Assembly (NCBI GenBank): GCA_002104905.1
Contig: MCFE01000710.1
Span: 1-42,928, forward strand
Origin: Basidiobolus meristosporus CBS 931.73
Lineage: Eukaryota > Fungi > Basidiobolomycota
Length of the DNA stretch: 42,928 nucleotides
Reading direction: 5' to 3'
Shown: positions 9,975-38,004 of the stretch, piece by piece
Layout of the letters: each line of letters starts with the position of its first letter
How positions within the stretch are numbered: position 1 is the first letter of the stretch
Notes under the pieces: model-generated
Database searches by the model: none
Told to the model about the DNA's origin: nothing
What the model saw: the letters and a program-made list of their open reading frames with translations, nothing else
Position numbers and translations under genes: made by a program

Positions 9975-11660
9975 ATGGGTTTTGTTGCCAAGTTGAACGA
10001 GGCAGTTGCTAAATCGCCAGTGGGCAGGTGGTTCAAGCTCCAAGGATCAGGTACCAACAAGGAACGAGCGAATACCAGATTCAGTTCGGAGATCCGTGCT
10101 GGTGTGGCTACCTTCGTTACCATGGCCTACATCATCTCGGTTAACTCTACCATCATTTCCCAGACTGGTGGCACCTGTGAATGTAATCCTCCTCCCGGCG
10201 CTACCGGGTCCGAAGCATTGTGTATTGGGGATCCAGTGTATGAAGCCTGTGTTAATGTGATTAAACATGACCTGATTACGGGGACGGCCGCCATTGCCTG
10301 TATCGCCTGCATAGCCATGGGCTTCTTTGCAAACTTGCCATTCGCGCTGGCTCCTGGTATGGGGATCAACGCCTACTTTACATACACCGTGGTTGGCTTC
10401 CACGGGAGTGGCAAGGTACCATACAGAACCGCTCTCGCTGCTGTCTGCATTGAAGGAATCATTTTTGTCATCTTATCTGCTATCGGGATTCGACAATGGC
10501 TGGCTAGACTCATTCCAAATTCGATCAAGGTCGCTACTGGTGCAGGTATCGGGCTTTACCTATGTTTCATTGGGCTTCAAAGCTCGGCTGGCATCGGATT
10601 AATCACAGCCGACTCCGCTACTCTGGTTACCCTTGGGGGATGTGCTCCATCGCATAAGAATAGCCAAGGGGTGTGTCAGTCAGGCAGGATGGAGGGGCCG
10701 ACAGTGTGGATGGGCATCCTAGGGTTTTTCCTGATCACCATGCTGACCTTGTTCAGAGTCAAGGGGGCAGTGTTGTGCGGAATCCTGGTTGTCGCCATCA
10801 CCTCTTGGTTCCGTGGAACTCCGGTTACCCATTTCCCCTACACCCCGGAAGGAAACGAGGCGTTCGATTTCTTCAAGAAGGTGATCACCTTCCATCCCAT
10901 TCAACACACCTTGGCCGCGTTCGACTTCGGGCTCAATCACAGCGAAGTTTGGGTCGCGCTTTTCACCATGCTCTACGTTGATATCCTCGATGCCACTGGA
11001 ACCATGTTCTCCATGGCGAAGTTCGGTGGATTCACCAAGGATAACGGTGATTTTGAGGGTATGGGCATGGCATTCATCGTCGATGGATGCACCATCATCA
11101 TTGGCTCGGTGTTTGGCGTTTCACCGGTTACCGTCTTTGTCGAATCTGGAGCCGGTATTACTGACGGAGGCCGAACTGGGATCACGGCGATAACCGTAGG
11201 GTTCTTTTTCTTCATTTCGCTCTTCCTTGCGCCGATCTTCGCATCGATCCCCCCTTGGGCCACCGGACCTGCTCTGATTGTCATCGGATCCATGATGACC
11301 AAGAGCGTGAAAGACATCAACTGGGACTATCTAGGAGACGCGGTTCCCGCCTTCCTTACCATCGCCCTTATGCCATTGACCTACTCGATTGCTTATGGGC
11401 TTATTGCCGGAATTGGCTCGTATATCGCCATTAACTTGACTGCCTGGCTTGTTGTTCGGGCTAGCTGTGGACGCATCACGCTGGATAGATCCCAGAAAGA
11501 GGCCTGGAATAATTTCAGAATGGATGACGGACAAAGAATCCTGGCTCCCTGGATCATTCGCCTCAAGAACAAGATGTTCGGAAAGCAAAAGTCGACGGAA
11601 GAGTTGAGCACAAAACTGGCGGTTCAAGACGAGATTGATAAGATCACCCGCCACATCTAG
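9975..11660 (+). CDS. azgA: AzgA-type (NCS2 family) purine permease, intronless, 561 aa
   Basis: EIRAGVATFVTMAYIISVN, ANLPFALAPGMGINAYFTYTVV, FVESGAGITDGGRTGIT, PAFLTIALMPLTYSIAYGL. Confidence 0.93.
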   Translation: MGFVAKLNEAVAKSPVGRWFKLQGSGTNKERANTRFSSEIRAGVATFVTMAYIISVNSTIISQTGGTCECNPPPGATGSEALCIGDPVYEACVNVIKHDLITGTAAIACIACIAMGFFANLPFALAPGMGINAYFTYTVVGFHGSGKVPYRTALAAVCIEGIIFVILSAIGIRQWLARLIPNSIKVATGAGIGLYLCFIGLQSSAGIGLITADSATLVTLGGCAPSHKNSQGVCQSGRMEGPTVWMGILGFFLITMLTLFRVKGAVLCGILVVAITSWFRGTPVTHFPYTPEGNEAFDFFKKVITFHPIQHTLAAFDFGLNHSEVWVALFTMLYVDILDATGTMFSMAKFGGFTKDNGDFEGMGMAFIVDGCTIIIGSVFGVSPVTVFVESGAGITDGGRTGITAITVGFFFFISLFLAPIFASIPPWATGPALIVIGSMMTKSVKDINWDYLGDAVPAFLTIALMPLTYSIAYGLIAGIGSYIAINLTAWLVVRASCGRITLDRSQKEAWNNFRMDDGQRILAPWIIRLKNKMFGKQKSTEELSTKLAVQDEIDKITRHI

Positions 11661-16270: not shown

Positions 16271-17096
16271 TCATACAGTGGCTACTCTTTTGGCTTGAAG
16301 AAGCTGGGCTTCGATATCCGCTTCTTCATAGCACCGCTTGCGTTTGTCCCCGCTCACCAAAGCCTGGGCTTCCGAGGAGGCTTCATTCAGAAGCAGAGCT
16401 TTAGATAACTCAGAATAAAATGGATGGGGATTTTCAGAGGATTCAACTTGAATATCTTGAGATATATTTTCACTGTTGGTTTGACAACGCTCATTAAGTT
16501 CCAGCGTCTCGGAATTGGTAGAGGCAAGATAATTATAGTACGAGGGTTGCTCGAACGCGTAATTGGGCTGATCCGAAGTGACGGCGGTCTGAGGTGTTGA
16601 AATAAGCTCTGAGCTGTAACAGTCACTTTCTGTAGCCAGGCTGTATGAAAACTCTGATGCAGTCTCGTTGGGCCAAGAGTAGTTTACGTATCCTGTAGAT
16701 ACATTGGAGGATACGGCGTATTCGGTGGCAGTAGGATACATGTAAGTGTTCATAATACTCAAGATGAGCTCGTTGTATGCGCTTCCATTGCAAGAGGCAT
16801 CCATGGGAGAGCGAGCGAGACCATCATCATAGAAGTAGTTATCTAAACAATGAAATGTACAGTAAGTAAACTATTGTTTTCCACGAGTGAAGGTGGGGCA
16901 AGCTACCGAAGATCTCTTTAGATGGGCTCAGATTCAAAGGGATCTGCTTCTGAAAATCGTTGATCTGACGAGCCTTTCTTAGAAAGTCCTTGAGAACGAC
17001 CTCTTTGGCAATGCCCAGATCTCGGTTGGATTCATACAGATGAGTGAGTTTGCTATCACCGAGGGTGATAACACGTTCGAGGGAGAGATAATCCAT
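16271..17096 (-). CDS. IER/SERTA-like protein: N-terminal helical motif, acidic Ser/Tyr-rich disordered middle, C-terminal bipartite NLS-like segment; 2 exons (17096-16907, 16842-16271)
   Basis: A 64-nt GT..AG intron joins both ORFs in frame (KEIF-D-NYFYDD). The N-terminus RVITLGDSKL..GIAKEVVLKDFLRKARQI resembles the IER N-terminal motif. The C-terminus carries KRKR..AKR. Confidence 0.65.
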
Positions 17097-18909
17097 GGGT
17101 TTGTGTATATGTATGTGCGTGTGAGAGTGTATGTTGTTTTGTATATATGCAAAAAGAAAGTTAATAGTGTGAGTAAGAGGATGAAAATCGAAATTCGAGC
17201 TCATACTGACATAAGGGTGCTTAAAAGCATAACCACGAAGTCATCCACCAAACAAATCCATCCCTGCCACAGGGGCCAGATCCAATGGTTATCTAAGGAT
17301 TACATGGGCACTTTCTAAAGAGAGCAGTCGTTTCTTCCAAAGAAATGATAGGAATTTCCTAATTTGCGCGTTTGATTCGAATGATTGGACATCAACGTGT
17401 CAAGAAATTTCTAGGAGACAATCTATTTTAAGCATGGGCCCGAATAGTCAACCGAAGTGAGTAGTAGCGCTTGATTTGCTGGATAGCCCCACTCCATTCT
17501 GTCAAATCATTCTTCAGGCCAAACACTCGCCAACTTCCTCTACCGCTGGTCAACCCGTCATTCCAACAGTCGTTAGAGTTGGTGTTGGTATGGTTTTGCA
17601 GAGGGCTTTACTAAACAGGTGAATCAAAGTTGCCCGTTGAATCGCAGCATACTCTGTTTCCAGATTTAGAGAAACTTACACAGCGCTCAGACACGATTAC
17701 CTGAAGATTCTAGGCATTGTTTCTCATTACATATATGAAGTCTACGGAAGATAGATGATGCTCAAATGCAAATGACCATCAAATAAGCAGTACTATCAAA
17801 GAGAGTGGCTTGGTTGTGTTTATCATGTTCGGTGACAGATACCAAGCTGGCAGTCTAGCTATTTAGAGTGGAAGTGCTTGGTGTTGGTTTTGGGAATTGA
17901 TCAGATGGCATATAGATGGCATATAGTTGGATATGCTAATGGATAACAATCAACCTCCTTAGCCATCTACCCGCATGAAACAATCGCGCTTCCAATCCAC
18001 TTTCTAGAATGAGCGATGTCATGAGTTTTAACAATAAGGTTATATTAAAGTGGGAACCTAGCTAGAGGCAATGCGTGAGTAAGCTGATGGCAAGCAGTCG
18101 GCGAGTTGGACCTATCCCGTCCCGAAGAGCGACACCTGCCGGCTAAAATGGCCAATGATAGGGATGGAGGATGTAAAAAAGCCGTATCCGGGCCAGCATC
18201 TCTTATCAGGCAAAATCCCATTTTGGCCATTCAAAGGACTTAGTAAGAGGCAATGACTAATTGTATTGAATTAACTTCGCAGGCTAACTTGCGGCAAACA
18301 AGCTAAGATGGTTTAAAGTATATTGATAAGATGTTTAGTCAGGAGAGGGCGTTATTGGTAATGTGGATGATATCATTTTTCTCGGTATAATTAAATGCCG
18401 TCGAGGACTGAATTTCCACCTTGTCTGGTTGACCAGTGATACTTGGATCAGATTTGTTAGTTCTCCAAAATAGGAGAATGCTGCGATAAATGGAGTTAAG
18501 GTTACACTATCTTCATGAAAAAAGAAGGATTTGGCAACTTGAACATTGATTAATATCGAAATGACGAAATGGGCCAAGGTGCTCGCTAGTCTAAATTATA
18601 ATACAGTGATCGTATCCGAACGGCCCGTAACGGCTGCCACGGCCATTCTGCTCAACGTGTGACTTAATTAGAAATAAATAGTCTTTGGCACAAAACAAAG
18701 TCGGCAGCGGCATTGAGTAGGACCGAGTCTCTGGCATAGCTTCGTAATAAAAGCTGGCGAGCTCTCCCAGCTTCATCACAAATTCGTAGACCTCTCTCAG
18801 AGATTTCGTTCATACATACACCTGCATTAGTCTAATCACCTCCACTCGCATTCTACTGTCCATCAGGGCATCCCTCATATATTATTTACCCTTTTGACTT
18901 AATTATTAG

Positions 18910-21900
18910 ATGGAGAAAGACACAAACCCTATAGACAATCGTCACAGCGACGATAGCGAAGGCACCGCCACATCGGCCGCATTCGATACCTCCAAAGAAA
19001 AAACTGCCCATGCTCACTTCGAGCGCCCAACAAGTAACAACTGGGGCGAAGGTGAGCCCGACATTGATGTGCTTGGAGCCACCGGCGAATACGAAGATCT
19101 CAGACGCGAGCTTTCCCGGATCTCCACCATTCATCGTGTCACGACCGCCCACTCGTCGTCGGAGGCCACGCTTGAGGAAGGTCAAGGCGGCGACGACTTC
19201 GATCTAGATGACTTCCTCCGCTCAGTAGCACAAAAGAACGAGCAGGCCGACATCAAGCAGAAACGCATTGGCCTCACTTTCAAGAACCTCACTGTCGTTG
19301 GTGACAAGGTCGGCAAGATCTATGCTCCTGATTGTGGTACCCCATTCGTGGGTATTGCCAATCTTTTCAACCCATTCGCTTGGAAGAAGAAGGAGAAGCC
19401 TGCTGGTGATGACGAGGGCCGAGTCATCCTCCACGAGATCGATGGTTTCTGTAAAGATGGCGAAATGATCTTCGTACTTGGTAGACCCGGGGCCGGTTGT
19501 TCCACTCTTCTAAGAGTCCTGGCCAACGAGCGTAAGCAATACAAGAAGATCACAGGCGAGGTCTCGTACGGCGGCATCTCAGCTGAGGAGTTCAGCAAGA
19601 AATACGTCGGTGAAGTTGCCTACAACCCTGAGGATGATTTCCATTTCCCCACCTTGACCGTCAAGGAAACGATGGACTTTGCGCTCAAGTGTAAGACCCC
19701 TGGAAAGCGTCTTCCTGATGAAACCAAGAAATCCTTCGTACAAAATGTTCGTGACACCCTGCTTAAGATGTTCGGTCTGTCCCACACCTTGGACACCTTG
19801 GTTGGTAACGAGTACGTTCGTGGTGTATCAGGTGGTGAACGTAAGCGTTTATCCATTGCTGAGCAAATGGCTGCCCGTGCTGCTATCAATCTTTGGGACG
19901 GTAGTACGAAGGGTTTAGATGCCTCCTCCGCCTTGAGTTACGTGAAGTCTCTGCGCATCATGACCAATATCATGCACAAAGCCACCCTTGTGACTATCTA
20001 TCAGGCATCCGAGAATATCTACCAGGAATTCGACAAGGTCCTGCTGTTGGATCAAGGCCGCTGTGTGTACTTCGGTCCTGCTCAGGAGGCCCGTGAGTAC
20101 TTCAACAAACTCGGCTTCGAGAGCAACCCTCGCCAAACCACTTCGGATTTCCTGACTGCTGTCACCGATAAGCACGAACGCAGAATCATCCCTGGTATGG
20201 AGAAGGTTGTCCCACAAACCTCTGAGGAATTGGAGAAGGCTTACAAGAACTCCAGCATCTATCAGAGAATGCTTTTGGAGAGAGCCGAATACGAGAACTT
20301 CCTATCTAGCAATTCACCCGACAAGGAATTCAGACAGCACGTATCCGAATCCAAACAAAAGCATGTTCCAAACAAGTCTCCCTACACTACCTCCTACGCA
20401 CAACAAATCAAGGCCCTTACTCTTCGTCAATTCCAACTCACCTTTGGTGATCGCGCTGCTCTGATCTCTCGTTATGTCTCTATTGTGGTTAAATCGATTA
20501 TTGTTGGTTCTGTATTTTTACTACTCCCCACCGATACTGGCGGTGCCTTTACCCGTGGTGGTGTCCTTTTCTTCGCTCTTCTGTTTAACTCCCTCGTTGC
20601 CCAAGCTGAAATCCCAACTGCCATGAGCGGTCGCTCCATCCTCTACAAGCACAAGTCCTTTGCCTTCTACTACCCTAGTGCCTTCTACATTGCTCAAATG
20701 GTCGCCGATATTCCCTTCCTGATGGTTCAGATTCTCCTATTCTCGTCGGTACTATACTGGATGGCCGGTCTTCAAGCAGATGCCGGGAAGTTCTTCATGT
20801 TCATGTTTATCTTGTTGGTATCCAGCTTCAGTTTGACCGCCTACTTCCGTATGTTTGCCGCATTCTCCAAGGACTTCGACACTGCGTCCCGGTACTCTGG
20901 CTTGGTTCTTATGGCCTACCTATTGTATACTGGTTATTTGATTCCCAAGACTCAAATGCATCCTTGGTTCGTCTGGATCTTTTGGATTAATCCGCTGGCG
21001 TATGGTTTCAAGGCGCTGATGTCGAATGAGTTCAAGGGATTGAAATTCACCTGCAATGCTGGAGCTTTGATTCCCAACGGACCTGGTTACAACGATATCA
21101 ACCATCAAGCCTGTACTTTGGCCGGTAGTCGTCCTGGTGAAAGCTTTGTCGATGGTGCTGCGTACATGGACAAGGCCCTCGGATACGATGCTGACCAGAT
21201 GTGGGTCGACTTTGTCGCCGTTGTTTGCTTCTGGATATTGTTCTCTCTTCTTGCCATGTTCGCCATGGAATTCAAGACATTCGGAAAGGGCGGCTTCACC
21301 TTGAGCATGTTCAAGCGCACCAAGGAGTCGGAAGTCAGTGGAAACTCCACTCCTGAAAACCATGTTCAAGTCGACGCCAAGATCGAGGACATCGCCCTCG
21401 AAGGCACTGACTTCACCTGGCACAACATTGATTACGTTGTTCCTGCCAAGGGCTTCCCTGATGGTAAACAACTGCTTCACAAGATCGACGGATGGGTTAA
21501 GCCTGGACAACTTACTGCTTTGATGGGTTCCTCTGGAGCTGGTAAGACCACTTTATTGGACGTGTTGGCGCAACGCAAATCTATCGGCAAGGTCACTGGT
21601 GATATCTTTGTGGACAGCCGTCCTCTTGGTGCTGACTTCCAACGTACCACTGGCTACTGTGAACAGATGGATGTTCACAACCCAGCTGTTACTGTCCGCG
21701 AGGCTCTGCAATTCTCTGCTACCCTGCGCCAACCTCCCGAGGTACCCCAATCTGAGAAGTACGCTTACGTCGAGGAAATTATTCATCTTTTGGAGATGGG
21801 CCCCATTGCTGATGCTCTTATTGGTGATGTCGAAAGTGGTGTTGGTATCTCTGTCGAACAGCGCAAGCTCCTGACCATTGGTGTCGAACTTGTCGCCAAG

Positions 21901-23289
21901 CCCAAGCTTCTTTTCCTCGATGAGCCTACCTCCGGTCTCGATGCTCAAGCTGCCTTCAACATCATCCGATTCATGCGCAAATTGGCCAACCAAGGACAAG
22001 CCGTCCTTTGTACCATCCATCAACCCAGTGCTGTTCTCTTTGACTTCTTCGACCACCTTTTGTTGCTCGCCCGTGGCGGTAGAACCGTGTATTTCGGCGA
22101 ATTGGGGCCTGACTCGAAGACCTTGTTGGATTTCTTTGAGCAAAATGGCGGACCCAAGTGCTCCTCGAGCGCCAACCCTGCCGAATATATTTTGGACGTT
22201 GTCAATGATAAGAAGCGTGGTATCGACTGGCCCACTGTCTGGGACAACTCGCAAGAAAAGGTTGCCGTCCAGCAAACCTTGAGCAACATCAAGCCTCTTG
22301 AACTCTCCTCCCAAGAGAAGCATGATCAACATGAATACGCTACCACATTCGGTACTCAATTGCGTGTTGTAGGCCGCAGAATGTTCACCTCCTGGTGGCG
22401 TAACATCACCTATAACTTCGGTCGTCTTATGTTCTGTCTCATCTTCTCCCTCCTCCTTGGCTTCTCCTTCTGGCAGCTTGGTAACACTCAAATGGATCTT
22501 CAGCTTCGTAACTTCGCCATCTTCCAGTCTCTTGTTATGGGAGTTATCTTCATGAACTTGGCCCAGCCCAGATACATTGATGAGCGTAATGTGTACAACC
22601 GTGAGAATTCAAGCAAGATGTATGGCTGGAAACCCTTCTGGATTTCCATCATGACTGCCGAGCTACCTTTCCTCGCAGTAACTGTCACTGTGTTCTGGCT
22701 TGTCTTCTACTGGGTTAGTGGATTCAGTGGTGATTCAGGACGTGCTTTCTACGCCTGGATCATGTATATCATCTTTGGCTTCTTCTGTGTGTCCTTGGGA
22801 CAAATGATCTCTGCCTTCTCCACATCCAAGCAAATGGCCGCTCTCCTCAATCCTTTCTTCTTCTCCATGTTGAATCTTTTCTGTGGTGTTGTTGTTCCAT
22901 ACAATGCTCTACCAGGCTTCTGGAAAGCTTGGATGTACTGGATTGATCCATTCCATTACTGGGTTGAAGGATTGGTCGTCAACGAGCTTCACGGACTTCC
23001 AGTTCGCTGTGCCAGCAACGAGTTTGTAACATTCAACCCACCCACTGGCCAGTCCTGTGTCCAATACGCCGGAAACTTCTTGGATCGCTCCCCAGGATAC
23101 CTCAATAACCCCAACGATACCATGAACTGCCAGTACTGCTCGTACTCCCTTGGTGACACTTTCTACGAACCACTCAAGTGGAGCTTCGACCACCGCTGGC
23201 GCAACTTTGGAATCATGGTTGGCTTCTGGGTCTTCAACCTTCTCTTCACTGGCTTTGTTATTTCCAGATTCCGTAGCAACCGTCGCTAA
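18910..23289 (+). CDS. Full-size pleiotropic drug resistance (PDR/ABCG) ABC transporter, intronless, 1459 aa
   Basis: NBD-TMD-NBD-TMD order. NBD1 has the degenerate Walker A GRPGAGCST and signature VSGGERKR; NBD2 has GSSGAGKT and the degenerate signature ISVEQRK. PDR_CDR-type extracellular Cys loops are present. Confidence 0.96.
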   Translation: MEKDTNPIDNRHSDDSEGTATSAAFDTSKEKTAHAHFERPTSNNWGEGEPDIDVLGATGEYEDLRRELSRISTIHRVTTAHSSSEATLEEGQGGDDFDLDDFLRSVAQKNEQADIKQKRIGLTFKNLTVVGDKVGKIYAPDCGTPFVGIANLFNPFAWKKKEKPAGDDEGRVILHEIDGFCKDGEMIFVLGRPGAGCSTLLRVLANERKQYKKITGEVSYGGISAEEFSKKYVGEVAYNPEDDFHFPTLTVKETMDFALKCKTPGKRLPDETKKSFVQNVRDTLLKMFGLSHTLDTLVGNEYVRGVSGGERKRLSIAEQMAARAAINLWDGSTKGLDASSALSYVKSLRIMTNIMHKATLVTIYQASENIYQEFDKVLLLDQGRCVYFGPAQEAREYFNKLGFESNPRQTTSDFLTAVTDKHERRIIPGMEKVVPQTSEELEKAYKNSSIYQRMLLERAEYENFLSSNSPDKEFRQHVSESKQKHVPNKSPYTTSYAQQIKALTLRQFQLTFGDRAALISRYVSIVVKSIIVGSVFLLLPTDTGGAFTRGGVLFFALLFNSLVAQAEIPTAMSGRSILYKHKSFAFYYPSAFYIAQMVADIPFLMVQILLFSSVLYWMAGLQADAGKFFMFMFILLVSSFSLTAYFRMFAAFSKDFDTASRYSGLVLMAYLLYTGYLIPKTQMHPWFVWIFWINPLAYGFKALMSNEFKGLKFTCNAGALIPNGPGYNDINHQACTLAGSRPGESFVDGAAYMDKALGYDADQMWVDFVAVVCFWILFSLLAMFAMEFKTFGKGGFTLSMFKRTKESEVSGNSTPENHVQVDAKIEDIALEGTDFTWHNIDYVVPAKGFPDGKQLLHKIDGWVKPGQLTALMGSSGAGKTTLLDVLAQRKSIGKVTGDIFVDSRPLGADFQRTTGYCEQMDVHNPAVTVREALQFSATLRQPPEVPQSEKYAYVEEIIHLLEMGPIADALIGDVESGVGISVEQRKLLTIGVELVAKPKLLFLDEPTSGLDAQAAFNIIRFMRKLANQGQAVLCTIHQPSAVLFDFFDHLLLLARGGRTVYFGELGPDSKTLLDFFEQNGGPKCSSSANPAEYILDVVNDKKRGIDWPTVWDNSQEKVAVQQTLSNIKPLELSSQEKHDQHEYATTFGTQLRVVGRRMFTSWWRNITYNFGRLMFCLIFSLLLGFSFWQLGNTQMDLQLRNFAIFQSLVMGVIFMNLAQPRYIDERNVYNRENSSKMYGWKPFWISIMTAELPFLAVTVTVFWLVFYWVSGFSGDSGRAFYAWIMYIIFGFFCVSLGQMISAFSTSKQMAALLNPFFFSMLNLFCGVVVPYNALPGFWKAWMYWIDPFHYWVEGLVVNELHGLPVRCASNEFVTFNPPTGQSCVQYAGNFLDRSPGYLNNPNDTMNCQYCSYSLGDTFYEPLKWSFDHRWRNFGIMVGFWVFNLLFTGFVISRFRSNRR

Positions 23290-23699: not shown

Positions 23700-24336
23700 C
23701 TAGATCTCGTATCCAAGAAGGATATACTTGGGATTCTGCGAGTATACTGAGGGGTGAACCATTTCAAAGCCAGCGTACATAAAGGCTCGGATCAGATTTG
23801 GGGAATCCGGATGTTGCTTCTCTAAACAGACTACCAATTTATCACAATGTAAAAACTCTTCGGCTAGCTCAAGGATGGACATGATAGTCTCCCGGAACTC
23901 GTTCTCCGCCCAGCTTTCGTAAGCAGGGGGTTGGAGGAACATGGTTCCATCCGAGATAAATGCTAGCCATTGGTTCATTGTGTGGTCTTCCAGTTTTCGA
24001 GAAGAAATAGCCAGGACCGCCGAAACGTTCTGAAGCGAACCTTTGGGATGCTTCAAGAGATCAATGACGAAATTTGAAGCACTCACTAGATTGCGGTTCA
24101 ACCCTTCGAAACTCCTTCCACCGCCACCCGCTTCTGCAGTTGAAGGGACGTCAAAAACACCACGTTGCCTTTTTACCCAACGTATAGTAGTAGTTCTCCC
24201 TACGATTCGAAGAAGTGCGGTAGAGAGAACAGAGGGCAAGGCAACTGCTACCGTTTGATTGAAGAGAATCATGAGTATTGCGACTCATGTCTTGCATTGG
24301 TATAGATATTTCGGAACTGAGATTAAGAGCAACCAT
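23700..24336 (-). CDS. OAZ1: Ornithine decarboxylase antizyme, expressed via +1 programmed ribosomal frameshift (ORF1 24336-24154, ORF2 24152-23700)
   Basis: ORF1 ends TGG TGT TTT TGA (W-C-F-stop). The +1 frame continues GAC GTC CCT (DVP) into the antizyme domain: FRETIMSILELAEEFLHCDKLVVCLEK, LIRAFMYAGFEMVHP, YILLGYEI. Confidence 0.95.
24151..24162 (-). other. +1 frameshift site UGG-UGU-UUU-UGA-C
   Basis: Exact match to the antizyme W-C-x-stop shift-site pattern, located at the ORF1/ORF2 junction. Confidence 0.92.
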
Positions 24337-25909: not shown

Positions 25910-27484
25910 TTAGGCAGAGGCGGAGGCGGCCTTGGGTTGAGTTTCGACATCAAAGAGAGCCTTGATGTTCTCAGTGCTCAAGGACTTAGGGCGCTCAATG
26001 GGCATACCCAAAGCACGATCCCAAATAAGCTGAGAGAGAACGCCTAGACCACGGGAAACACCGAAGAGGACGGTGTAGAAGTCTTGCTCAACCAAACCGT
26101 AGTGTTGAAGGAGAACACCGGAGTGAGCATCAACGTTGGGCCAGGGGTTCTTGGTCTTGCCGTGCTCAGTGAGGACGCCAGGAACAATCTTGTACAATTG
26201 GCTAACCAACTTGAAGGTAGGGTCATTGGGCAAGTGCTTCAAGGCGAATTCACGTTGGCATGCGTAACGAGGATCGGTCTTACGAAGAACGGCGTGACCA
26301 TATCCGGGAACAACACGTCCAGACTTGAGGGTCTTCCAGACATACTCCTTGATGGTTTCATCAGAGTGGTCGCCAGCGCCAAGCTCCTTGCGCATCTCCA
26401 AAATCCAGCGCAAGACTTCTTGGTTAGCAAGGCCGTGAAGAGGACCAGCCAATCCATTAAGGCCAGAGGCAAAGGAAAGGTAGGGGTCGGAAAGGGCGGA
26501 TCCAACCAAATGGGTAGTGTGTGCACTGACATTACCACCTTCGTGGTCAGTGTGAATGGTAAGATACAAACGCATCAATTCGACGAATTCCTTGTTGTCA
26601 CCCAATCCCAAAACAGTAGCCATGTTGTGGCCATAATCGGCGTTGGGGTTAAGGGCAGGGAGCTTGCCATCCTTGAAGACATTCTGGTAAATACGACCAG
26701 CAATGTTGGGAAGCTTGGCAATCAAGTTCATGGAATCTTCATAGGTGTATTCCCAGTACTTGGACTTGTGGATACCTTGATGGTAGGCCTTGGCGAAGGT
26801 AGATTCGCTTTGGAGGGCGGTAACGGCAAGGGAGAACTGGGTCATAGGATGGACGGTCTTGGGGCAACGGTCCAAAAGGTCCTCGACAAATTCGGGGATT
26901 TGAGCGCGAGAAGCCCACTCAGCAGAGAGCTGGTTGACTTGATCTTGGGTGGGGATCTCACCGGTAACCAAAAGCCAGAAAAGAGCTTCGGGGAGAGGCT
27001 CTTCACCGCCAGGGGCGGCTGGGAGCTTTTGTTGGCATTCAGGAATGGTCATGCCACGGAAACGGATACCCTCCTCGGGATCCAAAACGGAACCCTCCCA
27101 AATAAGGCCCTTGATACCTCTCATACCACCGTAGACCATATCAACGGTAACATTGCCCAAAACCTTGGATCCATGCTCCTTCTTGATTCTTTTGACCTCT
27201 TCCTGTTTCTCGGGGATAAGTTCACTAAGACGATCTCTCAAACCCTATTGTTGTGTTGAAAAAGGTCAATCAATGTAACATGCCAAATTCAGATTAATGA
27301 AATCAATGCTTACAGAGTTGGCGGGAGTCGAGTAAGCACGAACAGCAGTAGCAGCGAACTGGCGGCGAGCAGTAAGCTAGTAGAGATCAAAAGAGAGTCA
27401 GCAATGTTATGCAAAAGCATGTGTACTGGAAAGCGTGGCAACCTTAAGGAAAGATGTGGAAGCAGAAGAGCGGAGGAAAGACAT
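25910..27484 (-). CDS. CIT1: Mitochondrial citrate synthase; short presequence exons plus one long exon
   Basis: [62 protein letters not shown]. The presequence [14 protein letters not shown]|[17 protein letters not shown] is assembled across two introns (first donor choice inferred). TATAAATA at about 27560-27553. Confidence 0.96.
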
Positions 27485-30451: not shown

Positions 30452-33400
30452 ATGAATCCTCAGAATCAACCATACAGCCAGCCTGGGAGCCCACCAATCA
30501 ACAATGGCTATCCACAACAGCGGCCTCTTAATAAACTTCCCAATCCACCAAACTCTGGCATGATGCGCCCACCTAATAGCTTTTCACCCCCTCAAGGATC
30601 ATCTCCACAGCAGGGAATTCGCCCTCAAAGCGGCCAATTCCCACCTGGTGCTAGACCACCCGCTTTAGGAAGCCCAAATCAAATGCCTCCCGGACAGCGT
30701 CCTCCTATGGGTATTCATCGTCCAGCCCCACCCAACCAGCGTCCACTCAATAGCTCTTTGCGTATGTAACCCTTTTCGATGTTGACATCTATTAAGCAAT
30801 TCTTGGTCAAGATCTGATTCCATTCTCGTGCAGCTCCCGGTGGTCCCCGCCCTCAGCAACCTATCCAAAACGCCGGGGGGATGTATCAACAGAGCTCTGT
30901 AGGTCATCCTAACATTCCTTCCAGCGGACAGCCCATGATGGGCGGACGTCCTCCTTTACCTGGCCAACAAGCTGGTGGCTTTATTCCCCAACAGCAACAG
31001 CACGGCTTTCCTCAACAACAGCAAAATAATATACCCCAAGGCCAGGCCAGAGGAAGCTTGCCCAATGATAAGGACGATCTTGTGAGTCGACTATCCAGCC
31101 TGAATTTGCGCCAAAATGCTCCTGAGGTATGTAGAATCGATTCTAGCATTCTATTCTCGACAGGGTTTAACATTTTTCTTCCGAGGATAGGCTGCCAACG
31201 GACAGCATCATATGAGGCCTAAGCGTCCCTACATAGGTCCGGATGGAAGACCTATTGACCCGTCCAGTTACTACAATAACAATGACGCGCAGGGCCCTGT
31301 TGCCCCCAAACAACCCTCATTCTATAGCCCCATGGATCAACAACAAGCGCAGCCAGCGGTGGGTGGTTACACTCCCATGGCACAGCCACCGCCATCACAG
31401 TCACAACCGCAGATGCAACAGCCGATGCACCAGCCAGGTGTCCGCCCACCAGTTTCTAGCCATCCAGGTGTCGGACGTCCTGTCATGGACAATCCTCCGC
31501 GCAATCGCATCGATCCGGACCAGATTCCATCGCATATTGCTGTCCAAGAGCAAAACCAGAAAAACTTTATCGACACTCCTTACATGACTTATTCAAGAAC
31601 TGGTGTTCCCTTAGCCAGTACAAACTTCAAGGCTATCGATGAAGGTAGGCTCTAGGACAGTTTGGACGATCTCTTTGATGGGACACTCATGCGGCTTTTA
31701 GGATGCTGTAACCCAAGATTCATGCGGATGACTATGTACAATATCCCCGCATCGCCTGATCTTTTGAAGAGCTCGCATATGCCGCTTGGCATGATTGTTC
31801 AGCCATTGGCCGAACTGCGACACGATGAGGTTTTTATCGCCAGTCAAATCTCCCCTCTGACACCTGTATTCAACAAGAGCTTTTCTATCGATAGGCGCCT
31901 ATTGATGTGGTTGATTTCGGAGAAGCCGGTCCTATCAGATGTAACCGATGCCAGGGCTATATCAACCCATTTGTCACATTTATTGACGGTGGAAGGAAGT
32001 TTGTCTGCAACCTGTGTCAATTTGCAAATGAGGGTATTTTATGCTTATGAACGCGTTGTAATGCCGTGCGCGTACTCAACGTGATTGAATATCTAGTTCC
32101 GGATTCTTATTTCTCTAACCTGGATATGAATGGACGTCGCCTGGATATCGATATGAGGCCGGAATTGCGATGTGGTACTGTGGAGTTCGTGGCAACCAAG
32201 GTTTGGCCTATAGGTGCTCCGTTTTGAGTGGGTACACTTCTCACATTCATTCGCCAGGAATATTGTATTCGCCCTCCAGTTCCCGCATCTTACATTTTTG
32301 CCATTGATGTCTCTTGGAATGCCGTTCAAAATGGGATGCTTGCCTCCGCCGCTCAAGCCATTCGAGACTCCCTTTACTCTGGAAATGGAATTGCCCAAGG
32401 GATCCGGGTTGGCATCATAACCTACGATCGAAGCGTGCATTTCTACAACCTTTCAGCGAATCTTGAACAAGCTCAGATGATGGTTGTTCCCGATGTAAAC
32501 GATGTGTTTGTGCCACTGAGCGAAGGCTTCCTGATTGATCCGTATCAATCCAAAGCAGTCATAGAGGATCTATTGGAGAACCTTCCCACCATGTTCGGGA
32601 ACAACAGAATTGTCGAGCCCGCTCTTGGCGCCGCCATGCAGTCATCCTACATGGCTTTGAAGGACTTTGGTGGAAAGGTGTTTGTGTTCCATACCTGCCT
32701 GCCGACATTTGGACCAGGATCCTTAAAGAACAGAGATGACGTCAAACTCGCGGGCACAGATAAAGAGAAGACCCTCTTTGCGCCACAGGACGCATTTTAC
32801 AAGGATCTGGGGGCCAGCTTTGTTGAGTCGGGGATTAGCGTTGATATGTTCTCATTTACCAACACTTATGTTGATATTGCCACTATTGGCACGTTATCCG
32901 CGCTGACTGGTGGAGACATTCATCATTATCCCAATTTTGATGCGCAAAAAGATGGCTTCAAGTTCAATCAAGAGCTTCGGCACAATGTTTCCCGACAATA
33001 TGGGTTCAACGGTGTGTTGAGAATTAGATGTTCGAATGGCTTGAGTGTGGACGATCACTTTGGAAATTTCTACATGAGAAATGCCACTGACGTCGAGTTT
33101 GGCGGCATCGATAGCGACAAATCGATTGGAGTGGTCCTCAAACATGATGCCAAGGTGGATGAGAAGCTAGACGCCACTTTCCAATGCGCTCTGTTGTACA
33201 CTACGGCCACAGGCCAGAGAAGAATCCGTCTTCATAACCTGAGTGTTCCTACTACCACCTTAATGGCAAACATGTTCAAATATGCCGAGATGGACGCGAC
33301 CCTTAACCTGATGGTCAAGAGCGCAGTTACCCTAGCGTTGGACACTTCTCTCAAAGCGGTTCGGGATAAACTGACGGAGCAATGCTACCATATCCTTGGT

Positions 33401-34075
33401 GCTTACCGCAAACATTGTGCTTCAGCCACCTCTCCAGGGCAGTTGATCCTACCTGAAGCGTTGAAACTTTTCCCACTCAACACCTTGACGGTGCTCAAGT
33501 CCAGGGCATTAAGAAATGGAGTTGATATTTCCGTTGATTCACGCGTCGTTTGCATGCGTTTACTTAGAAGTATTGGGGTTTCGCAGTCGATAGCCTATTT
33601 CTATCCCCGGTTGTTCCCAATTCACAATCTCACGGAAAACGTCGCTTATGAGGATGAGCAAGGGGTGTTCCACCTCCCGCCCATGATTAGAGACTCCTAT
33701 TCCCGTCTTGAGGCGAATGGCGTTTATTTGCTTGAGAATACTCAGACATTGATGTGTTGGATTGGTAAAGAAGTGTCGCCGGAGTTTCTGCAAAGTTTGT
33801 TTGGCGTGGCCTCACTATCCGGGGTCGATCCCAGGATTCGTGCACTCCCGGTGTTGGACAACCCTATTTCTAAACAGGTCCAAACCCTTGTCCAACATCT
33901 TCAGAAGAATCGGGTAAGATACCCTGTGCTCCAGATTGTACGTCAATCTATGGATCAAGTGGAGCTTGAATTTGCCAACCTTTTGGTCGAGGATAAGAAC
34001 AACGATAATATGTCATATGTGGATTATTTATGCTTTATTCATCGCCAGATTCAGCACGAGTTGAGCACCGATTAA
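30452..34075 (+). CDS. SEC24: COPII cargo adaptor Sec24 (Sec24C/D / Sfb3-like); about 7 exons
   Basis: Pro/Gln-rich N-terminus, RIDPDQIPS, CNPRFMRMTMYNIP, zinc finger GPVRCNRC..KFVCNLC, trunk YIFAIDVS, GQRRIRLHNL, GQLILPEALKL, and a gelsolin-like C-terminus LVEDKNNDNMSYVDYLC. Confidence 0.94.
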
Positions 34076-34672: not shown

Positions 34673-34865
34673 CTCCGGCCGCATCATTCTGTTCATAAAG
34701 TGTACGATTACTCTACTAATCCGATAACCCCGTATCTAAAAGCGGGAAAATAAACTTCTTCGTAACCAATTTGAGTAAGGAAATAGCAGTTGGTTTTATT
34801 AAAGGTTTCCGAGTTAATGTGTGTATATAGGTAGTGATATATTGTGAATTTTACATGGCAAACAA

Positions 34866-37800
34866 TTAACGACCGAAGAATCTCTTGTAGAGAGCAGCAA
34901 CTCCACCATCGCCACTATGGTCTGAGGTGTCGTATGCACCAGCTCCTCCGTTGCCGCCATTATCTCCACCGTTGCCTCCTCCATTACCGCCGTAGCCGCC
35001 ATTACCTCCATTGCCGCCACCGTTACCGCCAGCACCGTTTCCAGTATCATAGGCACCGGCTCCTCCGTTACCACCACCATTGCCACCATTGCCTCCACCG
35101 TTGCCACCTCCGTTACCTCCATAGCCACCATTGCCACCACCATTGCCGCCATTTCCTTCACCGTTGCCACCACCGTTGCCGCCATAGCCACCATTGTCTC
35201 CACCGTTGCCACCAGCACCGTTTCCAGTATCGTAGGCACCAGCTCCACCGTTGCCACCTCCGTTGCCGCCATTGTCTGAACCATTTCCTCCACCGTTACC
35301 TCCATAGCCACCGTTCCCACCACCATTGCCGCCATTTCCTCCACCGTTGCCACCGGCACCGTTTCCAGTATCATAGGCACCAGCTCCTCCATTGCCACCA
35401 CCATTACCACCATTGTCGCCACCATTACCTCCATAGCCGCCGTTGCCACCACCGTTGCCGCCATTGTCTCCACCATTTCCTCCACCGTTACCTCCGTAGC
35501 CACCACCATTGCCGCCATTTCCACCACCGTTGCCACCAGCACCGTTTCCGGTATCATAGGCACCAGCTCCTCCGTTGCCACCATTGTCGCCACCATTTCC
35601 ACCACCGTTACCTCCATAGCCGCCGTTGCCACCACCATTACCGCCATTGTCTCCACCGTTGCCTCCACCGTTGCCACCAGCACCGTTTCCAGTATCGTAG
35701 GCACCAGCTCCTCCGTTGCCACCACCATTACCACCATTGTCGCCACCGTTACCTCCGTAGCCACCACCATTGCCCCCATTTCCACCACCGTTGCCACCAG
35801 CACCGTTTCCAGTATCGTAGGCGCCAGCTCCTCCGTTACCGCCTCCGTTACCGCCATTGTCTCCACCGTTGCCTCCACCGTTACCTCCGTAGCCACCATT
35901 GCCACCACCATTACCGCCACTTCCTCCACCGTTGCCACCAGAACCGTTTCCAGTATCGTAACCACCAGCTCCTCCGTTGCCACCACCGTTGCCGCCATTG
36001 CCACCATTGTCGCCACCATTTCCTCCACCGTTACCTCCGTAGCCGCCGTTGCCACCACCATTACCGCCATTTCCACCAGCACCGTTTCCAGTATCGTAGG
36101 CACCAGCTCCTCCGCTACCGCCTCCGTTACCGCCATTGTCGCCACCATTTCCTCCACCGTTACCTCCATAGCCGCCGTTGCCACCACCATTATCGCCATT
36201 GCCACCACCGTTGCCACCAGCACCGTTTCCAGTATCGTAGGCACCAGCTCCTCCGCTACCGCCTCCGTTACCGCCATTGTCGCCACCGTTGCCACCACCG
36301 TTACCTCCGTAGCCACCGTTGCCGCCGCCATTGCCACCACCGTTGCCACCAGCACCGTTTCCAGTATCGTAGGCACCAGCTCCTCCGCTACCGCCTCCGT
36401 TACCGCCATTGTCGCCACCATTTCCTCCACCGTTACCTCCGTAGCCACCGTTGCCGCCGCCATTGCCACCACCGTTGCCACCAGCACCGTTTCCAGTATC
36501 GTAGGCACCAGCTCCTCCGCTACCGCCTCCGTTACCGCCATTGTCGCCACCGTTGCCACCACCGTTACCGCCATTGCCACCACCGTTACCTCCGTAGCCA
36601 CCGTTGCCACCACCATTACCGCCACTTCCTCCACCGTTACCACCAGAACCGTTTCCAGTATCGTAACCACCAGCTCCTCCGTTGCCGCCACCGTTGCCGC
36701 CATTGCCACCACCGTTACCTCCGTAGCCACCATTGCCACCACCATTACCGCCACTTCCTCCACCGTTACCACCAGAACCGTTTCCAGTATCGTAACCACC
36801 AGCTCCTCCGTTGCCGCCACCGTTGCCGCCATTTCCACCACCGTTACCTCCGTAGCCACCATTGCCACCACCATTACCGCCATTTCCACCACCGTTGCCA
36901 CCAGCACCGTTTCCAGTATCGTAAGCACCAGCTCCTCCGTTACCGCCATTGTCGCCACCATTTCCTCCACCGTTACCTCCATAGCCGCCGTTGCCACCAC
37001 CATTATCGCCATTGCCACCACCGTTGCCACCAGCACCGTTTCCAGTATCGTAGGCACCAGCTCCTCCGTTACCGCCATTGTCTCCACCGTTGCCACCACC
37101 GTTACCTCCATAGCCACCATTGCCACCACCATTACCGCCACTTCCTCCACCGTTGCCACCAGAACCGTTTCCAGTATCGTAGGCGCCAGCTCCTCCGTTG
37201 CCACCACCGTTGCCGCCACCATTTCCTCCACCGTTACCTCCATAGCCGCCGTTGCCACCACCATTACCGCCATTGCCACCACCGTTGCCACCAGCACCGT
37301 TTCCAGTATTGTAGCCACCGGCTCCTCCGTTACCACCACCGTTACCGCCATTACCACCACCGTTACCACCATTGCCGCTGTGATCTGAGACATCATACGC
37401 ACCTGCACCTCCATTTCCACCACCGTTTCCTCCACCATTACCGCCACTTCCTCCGCCGTTTCCGCCAGCACCGTTTCCAGAATTGTAGGCACCAGATCCA
37501 CCGTTGCCGCCACCGTTACCGCCATTGTCGCCACCATTTCCTCCTCCGTTACCTCCATAGCCGCCGTTACCAGCACCATTGCCGCCAGCACCATTTCCAG
37601 TATCGTAGGCACCAGCTCCTCCGTTACCACCACCGTTACCACCATTGTCTCCACCGTTTCCTCCTCCGTTACCGCCATAGCCGCCATTACCTCCATTTCC
37701 TCCACCGTTACCGTTTCCTCCACCATTGCCACCGTAGCCGCCGTTTCCTCCATTGCCACCGCCATTACCACCTAATCCTCCAGAGAGGTCGCTAGTGTCA

Positions 37801-37919
37801 TAAGAGCCAACACCCCCAGCACCAGCACCAGCACCAGCATGACCAGAGCCTGAGCTTCCGGCGCCAACCGAGCAGGCAGCAGAGAGGACGAAGAGAAGGG
37901 CAGGAGCAGAGAATTTCAT
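34866..37919 (-). CDS. Secreted Gly/Asn-rich repetitive protein, 1017 aa, about 22 repeat units
   Basis: Signal peptide MKFSAPALLFVLSAACSVG, then units of (NGG/NGGG)n-YGG-(NGG)n-AGAYDTGNGAGG, ending LYKRFFGR. TATATAAG is 86 nt upstream. Confidence 0.85.
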   Translation of the reverse strand: MKFSAPALLFVLSAACSVGAGSSGSGHAGAGAGAGGVGSYDTSDLSGGLGGNGGGNGGNGGYGGNGGGNGNGGGNGGNGGYGGNGGGNGGDNGGNGGGNGGAGAYDTGNGAGGNGAGNGGYGGNGGGNGGDNGGNGGGNGGSGAYNSGNGAGGNGGGSGGNGGGNGGGNGGAGAYDVSDHSGNGGNGGGNGGNGGGNGGAGGYNTGNGAGGNGGGNGGNGGGNGGYGGNGGGNGGGNGGGNGGAGAYDTGNGSGGNGGGSGGNGGGNGGYGGNGGGNGGDNGGNGGAGAYDTGNGAGGNGGGNGDNGGGNGGYGGNGGGNGGDNGGNGGAGAYDTGNGAGGNGGGNGGNGGGNGGYGGNGGGNGGNGGGNGGAGGYDTGNGSGGNGGGSGGNGGGNGGYGGNGGGNGGNGGGNGGAGGYDTGNGSGGNGGGSGGNGGGNGGYGGNGGGNGGNGGGNGGDNGGNGGGSGGAGAYDTGNGAGGNGGGNGGGNGGYGGNGGGNGGDNGGNGGGSGGAGAYDTGNGAGGNGGGNGGGNGGYGGNGGGNGGDNGGNGGGSGGAGAYDTGNGAGGNGGGNGDNGGGNGGYGGNGGGNGGDNGGNGGGSGGAGAYDTGNGAGGNGGNGGGNGGYGGNGGGNGGDNGGNGGNGGGNGGAGGYDTGNGSGGNGGGSGGNGGGNGGYGGNGGGNGGDNGGNGGGNGGAGAYDTGNGAGGNGGGNGGNGGGYGGNGGDNGGNGGGNGGAGAYDTGNGAGGNGGGNGGDNGGNGGGNGGYGGNGGGNGGDNGGNGGAGAYDTGNGAGGNGGGNGGNGGGYGGNGGGNGGDNGGNGGGNGGYGGNGGDNGGNGGGNGGAGAYDTGNGAGGNGGGNGGNGGGNGGYGGNGGGNGSDNGGNGGGNGGAGAYDTGNGAGGNGGDNGGYGGNGGGNGEGNGGNGGGNGGYGGNGGGNGGGNGGNGGGNGGAGAYDTGNGAGGNGGGNGGNGGYGGNGGGNGGDNGGNGGAGAYDTSDHSGDGGVAALYKRFFGR
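34930..37770. repeat. Coding minisatellite of the Gly-rich gene (units about 90-180 bp; 132-bp period in the centre)
   Basis: An identical 70-nt block occurs at 36077, 36218, 36350 and 36482. Confidence 0.9.
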
Positions 37920-38004
37920 GTTGCAAAGGTATAAAAGTTTGTAAAACGAATATATTCAAGTGTTTACAAAGCACACTGATGAATGAGAGAGAGGGCAAGG
38001 GGGC

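What the first reader, a model, noticed from the sequence alone, without database searches (positions are those of the whole stretch)
16271..17096. Fungal IER5/SERTA-like protein: candidate PP2A-B55 adaptor outside animals
Seen: a two-exon gene whose first ~46 aa read MDYLSLERVITLGDSKLTHLYESNRDLGIAKEVVLKDFLRKARQI, followed by an acidic disordered region and a C-terminal KRKR..AKR. From memory, the human IER5 N-terminus is [41 protein letters not shown]. The two align without gaps: RVITL/RIVSI, K[LI], 21 residues, then LR.ARQ. Established: IER and SERTA-domain proteins use this helix-loop-helix to bind PP2A-B55, and IER proteins carry a C-terminal NLS. Inference: this is a pre-metazoan member of the family. 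I know of no description of IER-like proteins in fungi.
Basis: partly seen in the sequence, partly recalled or inferred. Interest (0 to 1): 0.8.

Follow-up and report, generated by a model that had tools for sequence, protein, structure and literature searches.

The report
Basidiobolus nuclear protein with IER5-like hairpin
A real, conserved two-exon gene of the fungus Basidiobolus encodes a small nuclear-type protein whose N-terminal helical hairpin fits the published rules for docking onto the PP2A-B55 phosphatase, as in animal IER5. No sequence or fold statistic shows that it belongs to that animal family.

Summary
Window 16271-17096 (minus strand) is a two-exon gene of Basidiobolus meristosporus CBS 931.73, annotated K493DRAFT_308128, a 253-aa "hypothetical protein". 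Four Basidiobolus genes share its intron position. Their N- and C-terminal modules are under strong purifying selection (dN/dS about 0.1 or less).

AlphaFold gives a hairpin (helices 6-22 and 29-51), a disordered acidic middle, and a C-terminal helix carrying KRKR...KR.

Membership in IER/SERTA is not demonstrated:
- Pfam gives no IER or SERTA hit at E<=10 for any member.
- hhalign gives P=0.07. The HMMER profile gives an empirical P of 0.02.
- The gapless score beats full shuffles (P=5e-4) but not shuffles that keep the hydrophobic pattern (P=0.16).
- Fold searches return only generic hairpins.
- Four of ten residues needed for IER5 binding are not kept, including S14.

In favour:
- All four proteins carry the published B55 helix-loop-helix determinants (K16; I29, K/R31, V33, V/I34) with IER spacing.
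- A language-model search puts SERTA as the nearest Pfam-labelled family.

My verdict is a plausible B55 binder (about 0.45), with homology unproven. Relatives were found only in Basidiobolus, and no RNA data were available.

The parts
16907..17096 (-). Exon 1: Met1 to Phe63 plus the first base of codon 64
   Evidence: Translation. The NCBI gene call covers the same span. Met1 is conserved, and the upstream in-frame extension is not conserved in the three other loci.
16843..16906 (-). 64-nt phase-1 intron (GTAGCT...TTGTTTAG)
   Evidence: An intron sits at the same position and phase in all four Basidiobolus genes. Lengths are 61, 64, 65 and 65 nt. Reading through it hits a stop.
16271..16842 (-). 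Exon 2: last two bases of codon 64, residues 65-253, and stop TGA (16273-16271)
   Evidence: Translation. It matches the suffix of the database protein P0001.
16944..17084 (-). Codes for the N-terminal helix-loop-helix (residues 5-51). Candidate B55-docking residues are R8, V9, L12, K16, I29, K31, V33, V34, L35 and F38.
   Evidence: AF2 model: helices 6-22 and 29-51, mean pLDDT 74. 33 of 64 columns are invariant. dN/dS is about 0.1 or less. The determinant pattern sits at K16 in all four genes.
16739..16786 (-). Conserved hydrophobic helix in the middle (residues 83-98, YNELILSIMNTYMYP)
   Evidence: Conserved block in A1. Predicted helix 83-98 at low confidence. Function unknown.
16274..16423 (-). 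Conserved C-terminal module (residues 204-253): PFYSELSKALLLNE followed by DKRKRCYEEADIEAQ..KR.ATV
   Evidence: Almost invariant in the four proteins. dN/dS is 0.04-0.11. Predicted helices 209-215, 220-226 and 230-252.
16334..16345 (-). KRKR (residues 230-233), a candidate nuclear localisation signal, with KR at 248-249
   Evidence: Read directly from the sequence and invariant in the family. The nuclear-import role is inferred from the motif only.

Best explanation
This is a genuine protein-coding gene, restricted to Basidiobolus as far as the searches reach. It encodes a small, mostly disordered, probably nuclear protein with two constrained modules.

The mechanism I think most likely is as follows. 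The N-terminal helix-loop-helix (residues 5-51) docks onto the conserved substrate-binding face of the PP2A regulatory subunit B55/Cdc55. I29 and V33 would sit in hydrophobic patch 1, V34 on patch 2, and K31 together with K16 from helix 1 on the acidic patch 3. The C-terminal KRKR...KR tail would carry the protein into the nucleus. There it would either block PP2A-B55 or redirect it to partners bound by the acidic middle and the PFYSELSKALLLNE motif. This is how IER5/IER2 and the SERTA-domain proteins work in animals.

Shown here: the gene model, the conservation, the hairpin prediction, and the presence of the published determinants.

Inferred: B55 binding, nuclear import, and any descent from IER/SERTA. 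Of the 0.45 I give to B55 binding, I assign about 0.3 to true homology and 0.15 to convergence.
For: Gene reality:
- The annotation calls the same gene.
- There are four genes in two species, all with an identical intron position.
- Synonymous sites are saturated, yet pN is only 0.06-0.23 in the terminal modules.

Hairpin: helices 6-22 and 29-51 at pLDDT 74. IER5 residues 3-45 form a helical hairpin in the cryo-EM structure.

Determinants:
- All are present and conserved here: I29, V33, V/I34, K/R31 and K16.
- The K-to-i spacing is 13, as in IER5 (K17 to L30).
- The pattern K-x12-hydrophobic-x-[KR]-x-hydrophobic-hydrophobic occurs 0.18 times per 1000 aa in 22,014 ORF residues of local Basidiobolus DNA. 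It sits at K16 in all four proteins and at K17 in IER5.

Binding-critical positions: six of the ten IER5 positions are kept or conservatively replaced (K17, L30, I10, K32, L35, V39). R9 is identical.

Alignment: the gapless 41-column alignment gives P=5.5e-4 against full shuffles.

Language-model search:
- With exon 1 as query, a chordate SERTA cluster ranks 3rd overall (score 0.79).
- With P0004 residues 1-64 against named clusters only, it ranks 2nd (score 0.76).
- In both searches all ten best hits that carry a family share one family or clan.

Architecture: an N-terminal hairpin plus a C-terminal basic signal is the minimal functional pair in IER5.
Against: - Pfam gives no IER or SERTA match at E<=10 for any of the four proteins or their N-terminal domains.
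- PDB sequence searches with the protein and with the family profile do not find IER5.
- hhalign gives P=0.073 over 11 columns.
- The HMMER profile scores 3.6 bits, with empirical P=0.02 (full shuffles) and 0.11 (pattern-preserving shuffles).
- The gapless score is unremarkable once the hydrophobic/polar pattern is held fixed (P=0.16).
- Foldseek and VIA-align return only generic helical hairpins. 8uo5_D is not among Foldseek's 102 matches at E<=10, nor in VIA-align's top 50 of about 48,000 chains.
- IER5 S14 (S14A abolishes binding) is an invariant Gly here. H31, R25 and K29 are not matched in register.
- Net charge over the aligned 41 residues is +2 to +4, against +7 for IER5.
- The strict IER/SERTA consensus of Cao et al. 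is only partly met.
- The candidate was picked from a very large scan because it resembled IER5. Chance look-alikes are therefore expected.
Confidence: 0.45

Rival explanations
1. It is a lineage-specific nuclear factor, for example a transcription co-regulator. Its N-terminal amphipathic hairpin binds some other partner or dimerises. The likeness to IER5 is a coincidence of helix lengths, loop length and hydrophobic periodicity, found because a very large number of sequences were read.
For: - The similarity disappears when the hydrophobic/polar pattern is preserved in the null (P=0.16; P=0.11).
- There is no profile hit to IER or SERTA.
- The fold is generic: 304 PDB representatives reach Z>=5.
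- Relatives were found only in Basidiobolus in an exhaustive search of 1.84 billion representatives.
- Key IER5 residues S14 and H31 and the basic loop are not kept.
- The domain is only weakly basic.
Against: - All five published B55 determinants are present with IER spacing and are conserved in four genes.
- SERTA, rather than any other family, is the nearest Pfam-labelled family for two members.
- The same N-terminal placement and C-terminal basic tail occur in IER proteins.
- No alternative partner is suggested by any search.
Confidence: 0.45
2. It is a SERTA-type transcriptional co-regulator that has kept the hairpin fold and the acidic activation region but does not act through PP2A-B55.
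For: - SERTA is the nearest Pfam-labelled family in the language-model search.
- The protein has a long acidic region and a conserved PFYSELSKALLLNE motif that resembles short acidic-hydrophobic activation motifs (the resemblance is my inference).
- Cao et al. note that SERTAD proteins carry potent activation domains.
Against: - There is no Pfam SERTA hit.
- The hairpin sits at the extreme N-terminus as in IER. In CDCA4 the SERTA domain is internal, at residues 37-72.
- Spacing follows IER rather than CDCA4: 13 residues from K16 to I29, as from K17 to L30 in IER5. In CDCA4, K44 to L56 is 12.
Confidence: 0.07
3. It is not a real gene, only a chance ORF pair joined by an annotation pipeline.
For: No RNA run could be listed. 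There is no Pfam domain.
Against: - Four genes in two species keep both reading frames across an intron whose length varies by non-multiples of three.
- dN/dS is 0.04-0.11 in the terminal modules with saturated dS.
- Synteny next to a PDR-type ABC transporter is conserved.
Confidence: 0.02

Closest known systems
IER5 / IER2 / IER5L (animal immediate early response proteins; IER5-N50 bound to PP2A/B55alpha, PDB 8uo5)
   Same: - A helix-loop-helix of about 45 residues starts within a few residues of Met1.
- It is followed by a long disordered region and a basic C-terminal nuclear signal.
- Sizes are similar: 253-273 aa here and 327 aa for IER5.
- The alignment is gapless, with R9, K17, K32, L40, R41, A43, R44 and Q45 identical in the window protein.
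- I10, I13, L30, L34, L35, V36 and V39 are replaced by other hydrophobic residues.
- The spacing from the helix-1 Lys to the first patch-1 residue is the same, 13.

   Different: - There is no significant sequence or profile match.
- S14 becomes an invariant Gly, and H31 becomes A/S/G.
- The loop is not basic: SNRDLG here, against SRVQRGGIK in IER5.
- Net charge of the domain is +2 to +4, against +7.
- The gene has an intron.
- The family also has a conserved mid helix and a PFYSELSKALLLNE motif. I did not compare these with IER proteins.
- It occurs in a fungus.
SERTA-domain proteins (SERTAD1-4, CDCA4; Pfam PF06031)
   Same: - They use a helical hairpin that binds B55 with a Lys in helix 1 (CDCA4 K44) and i/i+2/i+4/i+5 determinants in helix 2 (L56, R58, V60, L61).
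- They are acidic, largely disordered nuclear co-regulators.
- SERTA is the nearest Pfam-labelled family in the language-model search.
   Different: - There is no Pfam SERTA hit at E<=10.
- The SERTA domain is internal (CDCA4 residues 37-72), whereas this hairpin is N-terminal.
- The loop here is one residue longer than in CDCA4.
- The strict consensus is only partly met. For helix 1, [I/L][aliphatic/aromatic]x-aliphatic-S-aliphatic-xK-aliphatic, 4 to 5 of 7 defined positions match. For helix 2, [HKR]xxL[LI]x[SN], 0 to 2 of 4 match.
Zds1/Zds2 C-terminal Cdc55-interaction domain (budding yeast)
   Same: It is a fungal protein that binds B55/Cdc55 through a helix-loop-helix on the same conserved surface. 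This shows the binding mode exists in fungi.
   Different: It is an unrelated, much larger protein whose domain is C-terminal. No sequence match to it appeared in any search here. In Zds1 position i+2 is acidic and a loop Arg makes the salt bridge.

Membership tests
IER (Pfam PF05760) | Significant match to the family profile | tested here: not met
   hmmscan against Pfam-A at E<=10 lists no IER hit for exon 1, exon 2, the four full-length proteins or the four N-terminal domains. HMMER's filters drop most hits above E of about 0.1, so a very weak match cannot be excluded.
IER (Pfam PF05760) | Detectable sequence similarity to IER5-N50 itself | tested here: inconclusive
   - hhalign, family profile against the IER5 41-mer: P=0.073, 11 columns.
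- hmmsearch --max: 3.6 bits, empirical P=0.02 (full shuffles) and 0.11 (pattern-preserving shuffles).
- Gapless 41 columns: P=5.5e-4 (full shuffles) and 0.16 (pattern-preserving shuffles).
- PDB sequence searches do not return 8uo5_D.
IER (Pfam PF05760) | N-terminal helical hairpin of about 45 residues starting near Met1 | tested here: met
   AF2 gives helices 6-22 and 29-51 at mean pLDDT 74. The start codon is supported by conservation. IER5 residues 3-45 form the hairpin.
IER (Pfam PF05760) | Residues whose mutation abolishes or reduces B55 binding in IER5 (S14, K17, L30; I10, R25, K29, H31, K32, L35, V39) | tested here: inconclusive
   - Six of ten are kept or conservatively replaced: K16, I29, V9, K/R31, V/I34 and F38.
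- Four are not: G13 for S14, N/T/S24 for R25, G28 for K29, and A/S/G30 for H31.

IER (Pfam PF05760) | C-terminal nuclear localisation signal required for function | tested here: inconclusive
   KRKR (230-233) and KR (248-249) are invariant in the four proteins. This is a motif only. Localisation was not tested.
IER (Pfam PF05760) | Physical binding to PP2A-B55, and rapid stress induction of the transcript | not testable with these tools
   No complex prediction was available. No RNA run was listed.
SERTA (Pfam PF06031) | Significant match to the family profile | tested here: not met
   There is no SERTA hit at E<=10. SERTA is only the nearest Pfam-labelled family in the language-model search, at scores of 0.76-0.79. 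The tool rates that as a lead only.
IER/SERTAD superfamily (Cao et al., bioRxiv 10.1101/2023.08.29.555174) | Consensus motifs: helix 1 [I/L][aliphatic/aromatic]x-aliphatic-S-aliphatic-xK-aliphatic; helix 2 [H/K/R]xxL[L/I]x[S/N] | tested here: not met
   - Helix 1 is V9-I-T-L-G-D-x-K-L17. K and three aliphatic positions fit. Ser is replaced by Gly and one aliphatic position by Asp/Glu. The latter aligns with IER5 L15, where L15R is tolerated.
- Helix 2 matches 0 to 1 of 4 positions in register, and 2 of 4 with a one-residue shift.

IER/SERTAD superfamily (Cao et al.) | Structural similarity to IER5-N50 standing out in a fold search | tested here: not met
   - Foldseek against PDB: best E=2.8. 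8uo5_D is not among the 102 matches at E<=10.
- VIA-align against 48,161 chains: only generic hairpins, top Z 7.0.
- Shape search of the ESM Atlas: no SERTA or IER cluster.
Hairpins are too common for this test to discriminate.
Helix-loop-helix class of PP2A-B55 binders (Kruse et al., Sci Adv 2024, PMC11446282). This is a functional class, not a homologous family. | The binding helix starts with hydrophobic residues at i and i+4 (patch 1), a hydrophobic i+1/i+5 (patch 2) and a basic i+2 (patch 3). An extra basic residue comes from the preceding helix. | tested here: met
   - I29 (i), K/R31 (i+2), V33 (i+4) and V/I34 (i+5) lie at the start of predicted helix 2.
- K16 lies in helix 1.
- All are conserved in four proteins.

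Sequence determinants only. Binding was not tested.

The most novel reading that the evidence does not exclude
The IER/SERTA type of PP2A-B55 regulator is not an animal invention. Its hairpin-plus-nuclear-signal design was already present in the common ancestor of fungi and animals, and it survives in a highly diverged form in Basidiobolus. It may also survive in the two uncharacterised Mucoromycota clusters that the language-model search placed next to this protein.
Probability: 0.3. Interest if true: 0.7.

Novelty: new variant of a known kind. Interest (0 to 1): 0.5.

Why it matters
PP2A-B55 is a major cell-cycle and stress phosphatase conserved from yeast to humans, but its IER and SERTA regulators are described only in animals. 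My paper searches found no description of such proteins in early-diverging fungi. One mushroom GWAS paper mentions a gene labelled SERTAD3, and I could not verify that label.

A fungal protein using the same hairpin would push this regulatory design back to the opisthokont ancestor, or else show that it arises repeatedly. Kruse et al. suggest such helices may arise de novo through few mutations. Either outcome would add a diverged natural variant for mapping which hairpin residues B55 actually needs. An example is Gly in place of the Ser that is essential in IER5.

If binding fails, the gene remains an ordinary lineage-restricted orphan.

Tried and rejected
Searches that found no further relatives:
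- Word-index search with exon 1 alone found no candidate.
- The same search with the N-terminal alignment A2 gave one candidate and no score.
- Exhaustive phmmer of exon 1 against 1.84 billion representatives returned only the protein itself, its paralogue and one repeat protein (P0003). I reject P0003 as spurious because it matches only a repeated SKLTHLY..RD string.
- Two metagenome scans, with C-terminal and then N-terminal patterns, confirmed no relative.

Other attempts:
- Four fold searches were uninformative for a two-helix hairpin.
- The weak Pfam WIF hit (E=0.002-0.004, below cut-off) appears in one of four members, so I reject it.
- The weak DUF5974, bL9m_C, LYR and DUF5411 hits are all at E>=0.04 and inconsistent among members. 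I reject them.
- An HSE-like element about 315-320 nt upstream (window 17399-17416) is not conserved in the other three promoters. I do not use it as evidence.
- No RNA run was listed.
- The species tested in Kruse et al. fig. S11 could not be read from the held text.

Handling of sequences:
Exons were searched by reference. Full-length work used the database's own record P0001, which a search returned. The dN/dS script threaded codons exon by exon and skipped the split codon 64.

Full report
**Source and gene model**

The window is contig MCFE01000710.1 of Basidiobolus meristosporus CBS 931.73 (GCA_002104905.1). I identified it by an exact look-up of the neighbouring ABC transporter. The organism belongs to the phylum Basidiobolomycota.

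The finding lies on the minus strand:
- Exon 1 runs 17096..16907.
- A 64-nt phase-1 intron runs from GT at 16906 to AG at 16843.
- Exon 2 runs 16842..16271 and ends in TGA.

The public annotation calls the same 253-aa product at the same coordinates. The exhaustive protein search returned it as P0001, named K493DRAFT_308128 'hypothetical protein'. The quoted N-terminal sequence, the acidic polar middle (D+E 22 against K+R 3) and the KRKR...AKR tail are all present.

**Is it a real gene?**

Yes. Three relatives exist, all in Basidiobolus:
- a paralogue in the same genome (P0002);
- two genes in B. ranarum (P0004, P0005).

All four genes have one phase-1 intron after nucleotide 190. The introns are 61-65 nt long and end in TTGTTTAG. 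Synonymous sites are saturated (pS 0.54-0.89). The non-synonymous difference (pN) is only 0.11-0.23 in residues 1-63 and 0.06-0.13 in residues 201-253. Where dN/dS is computable it is 0.04-0.11 in these modules, against 0.16-0.38 in the middle.

Met1 is conserved. The in-frame upstream ATG in the window has no counterpart in the other loci.

The window gene, L002 and L004 lie beside a PDR-type ABC transporter. The P0004 locus (L003) starts about 1.7 kb upstream of its gene, so that side is not visible there. It shares the xanthine/uracil permease neighbour with the window instead. P0001/P0004 and P0002/P0005 therefore look like orthologous pairs from an older duplication.

No RNA run could be listed, so the splice is supported by conservation and annotation only.

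**Anatomy**

AlphaFold2 on the N-terminal alignment gives helix 6-22, loop 23-28 and helix 29-51, with mean pLDDT 74. The full-length model is mostly disordered, with mean pLDDT 44.7. It has extra helices at 83-98 and 209-252. The conserved blocks are residues 1-64, the YNE..MN.YMYP helix, PFYSELSKALLLNE, and DKRKRCYEEADIEAQ..KR.ATV.

**The comparison with IER5**

It is 100% identical to PDB 8uo5_D.

The statistics are marginal:

| Test | Result |
|---|---|
| Gapless 41 columns, full shuffles | P=5.5e-4 |
| Gapless 41 columns, hydrophobic/polar pattern kept | P=0.16 |
| hhalign, family profile vs IER5 | P=0.073, 11 columns |
| HMMER profile, no filters | 3.6 bits; empirical P=0.02 (full shuffles), 0.11 (pattern kept) |
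| Pfam, E<=10 | neither IER nor SERTA for any member or fragment |
| PDB sequence searches | IER5 not returned |
| Fold searches | only generic hairpins |

These negatives have limited power. Cao et al. linked IER to SERTA by structure search, not by sequence. A two-helix hairpin is also too common a shape to discriminate.

**What speaks for a B55-binding hairpin**

Two papers define what matters.

Cao et al. (bioRxiv 10.1101/2023.08.29.555174) list the IER5 contacts and mutations:
- S14A, K17E and L30E abolish binding.
- I10A, R25E, K29E, H31A, K32E, L35A and V39A reduce it.
- L15R and N20A are neutral.

Kruse et al. (PMC11446282) give general rules for helix-loop-helix binders:
- a hydrophobic i+1/i+5;
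- a basic i+2;
- a Lys from the preceding helix.

In all four Basidiobolus proteins these are I29, V33, V/I34, K/R31 and K16. The Lys sits 13 residues before position i, as in IER5; in CDCA4 the distance is 12. The corresponding pattern occurs 0.18 times per 1000 residues in local ORFs. It sits at residue 16 in all four proteins and at residue 17 in IER5.

Six of the ten mutation-sensitive IER5 positions are kept or conservatively replaced, and R9 is identical.

A protein-language-model search of 7.7 million Atlas clusters gave separate support. With exon 1 as query, a chordate SERTA cluster ranked third overall. With the N-terminus of the more distant P0004, searched against named clusters only, it ranked second. 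Uncharacterised Mucoromycota clusters ranked alongside it. The tool rates scores of 0.76-0.86 as leads only.

**What speaks against**

- The Ser whose loss abolishes IER5 binding is an invariant Gly here.
- H31 and the two basic loop residues are not matched in register.
- The domain is far less basic, at +2 to +4 against +7.
- The strict IER/SERTAD consensus is only partly met.
- No relative was found outside Basidiobolus.
- The candidate was selected from a huge scan precisely because it looked like IER5.

**Verdict**

- The protein fits the functional class 'helix-loop-helix B55 binder with a nuclear signal' at the level of sequence determinants and predicted structure. I rate actual B55 binding at about 0.45.
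- Membership in the IER or SERTA families fails the profile tests and is unproven. I rate common descent at about 0.3.
- The main rival, at 0.45, is an unrelated lineage-specific nuclear factor whose amphipathic hairpin merely shares IER5's geometry.

I found no paper describing IER- or SERTA-like proteins in early-diverging fungi. A mushroom GWAS paper labels one gene SERTAD3 without evidence I could check.

Exons were searched by reference, and full-length analyses used the database record P0001. The only typed letters were the 41 IER5 residues quoted in the finding.

Noticed in passing
window 18910-23289 (+); L002 1-1212; L004 1-1380: A 1459-aa PDR/CDR-type ABC transporter in a single ORF is transcribed divergently from the gene. 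The same adjacency is seen at the P0002 (L002) and P0005 (L004) loci. This points to an old segmental or whole-genome duplication in Basidiobolus.
   Followed up: partly
window 23700-24272 (-): An ornithine decarboxylase antizyme gene (PF02100, 190-aa call). Another first-stage note flags a +1 frameshift site at 24151-24162.
   Followed up: no
window 34814-37919 (both strands): Three overlapping ORFs of about 1000 aa lie on both strands in a GC-rich stretch (58.8% GC in 36001-38000) with strong C skew (GC skew down to -0.44). The 1017-aa ORF has no Pfam hit. Another first-stage note reads it as a polyglycine repeat protein.
   Followed up: no
window 17399-17416: A heat-shock-element-like run (TCC-ta-GAA-at-TTC-tt-GAC on the gene's strand) lies 303-320 nt upstream of the start codon, in the intergenic region shared with the ABC transporter. 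It is not conserved in the three related promoters.
   Followed up: yes
window 17097-17204 (-): An in-frame upstream ATG at 17204 extends the exon-1 reading frame by 36 codons. The extension is not conserved and is interrupted by stops at the other three loci, so Met at 17096 is the likely start.
   Followed up: yes
L002 9859-10445; L003 3652-4244: A 174-aa gene with no Pfam hit follows the hairpin-protein gene at two of the related loci. In L003 it is followed by an Slx4-domain gene and a xanthine/uracil permease. The window has a permease at 9975-11660.
   Followed up: no
P0003 (150 aa): An unrelated protein built of repeats of NSSKLTHLYHTTRDAVSLHE matched residues 2-27 at E=8.6e-4. This is a chance hit to the SKLTHLY..RD string.
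   Followed up: yes
window 9975-11660, 25910-27241, 32228-34075, 39683-40762: Ordinary housekeeping neighbours: a xanthine/uracil permease, citrate synthase, a Sec23/Sec24-family protein and a TMEM185-like membrane protein.
   Followed up: partly
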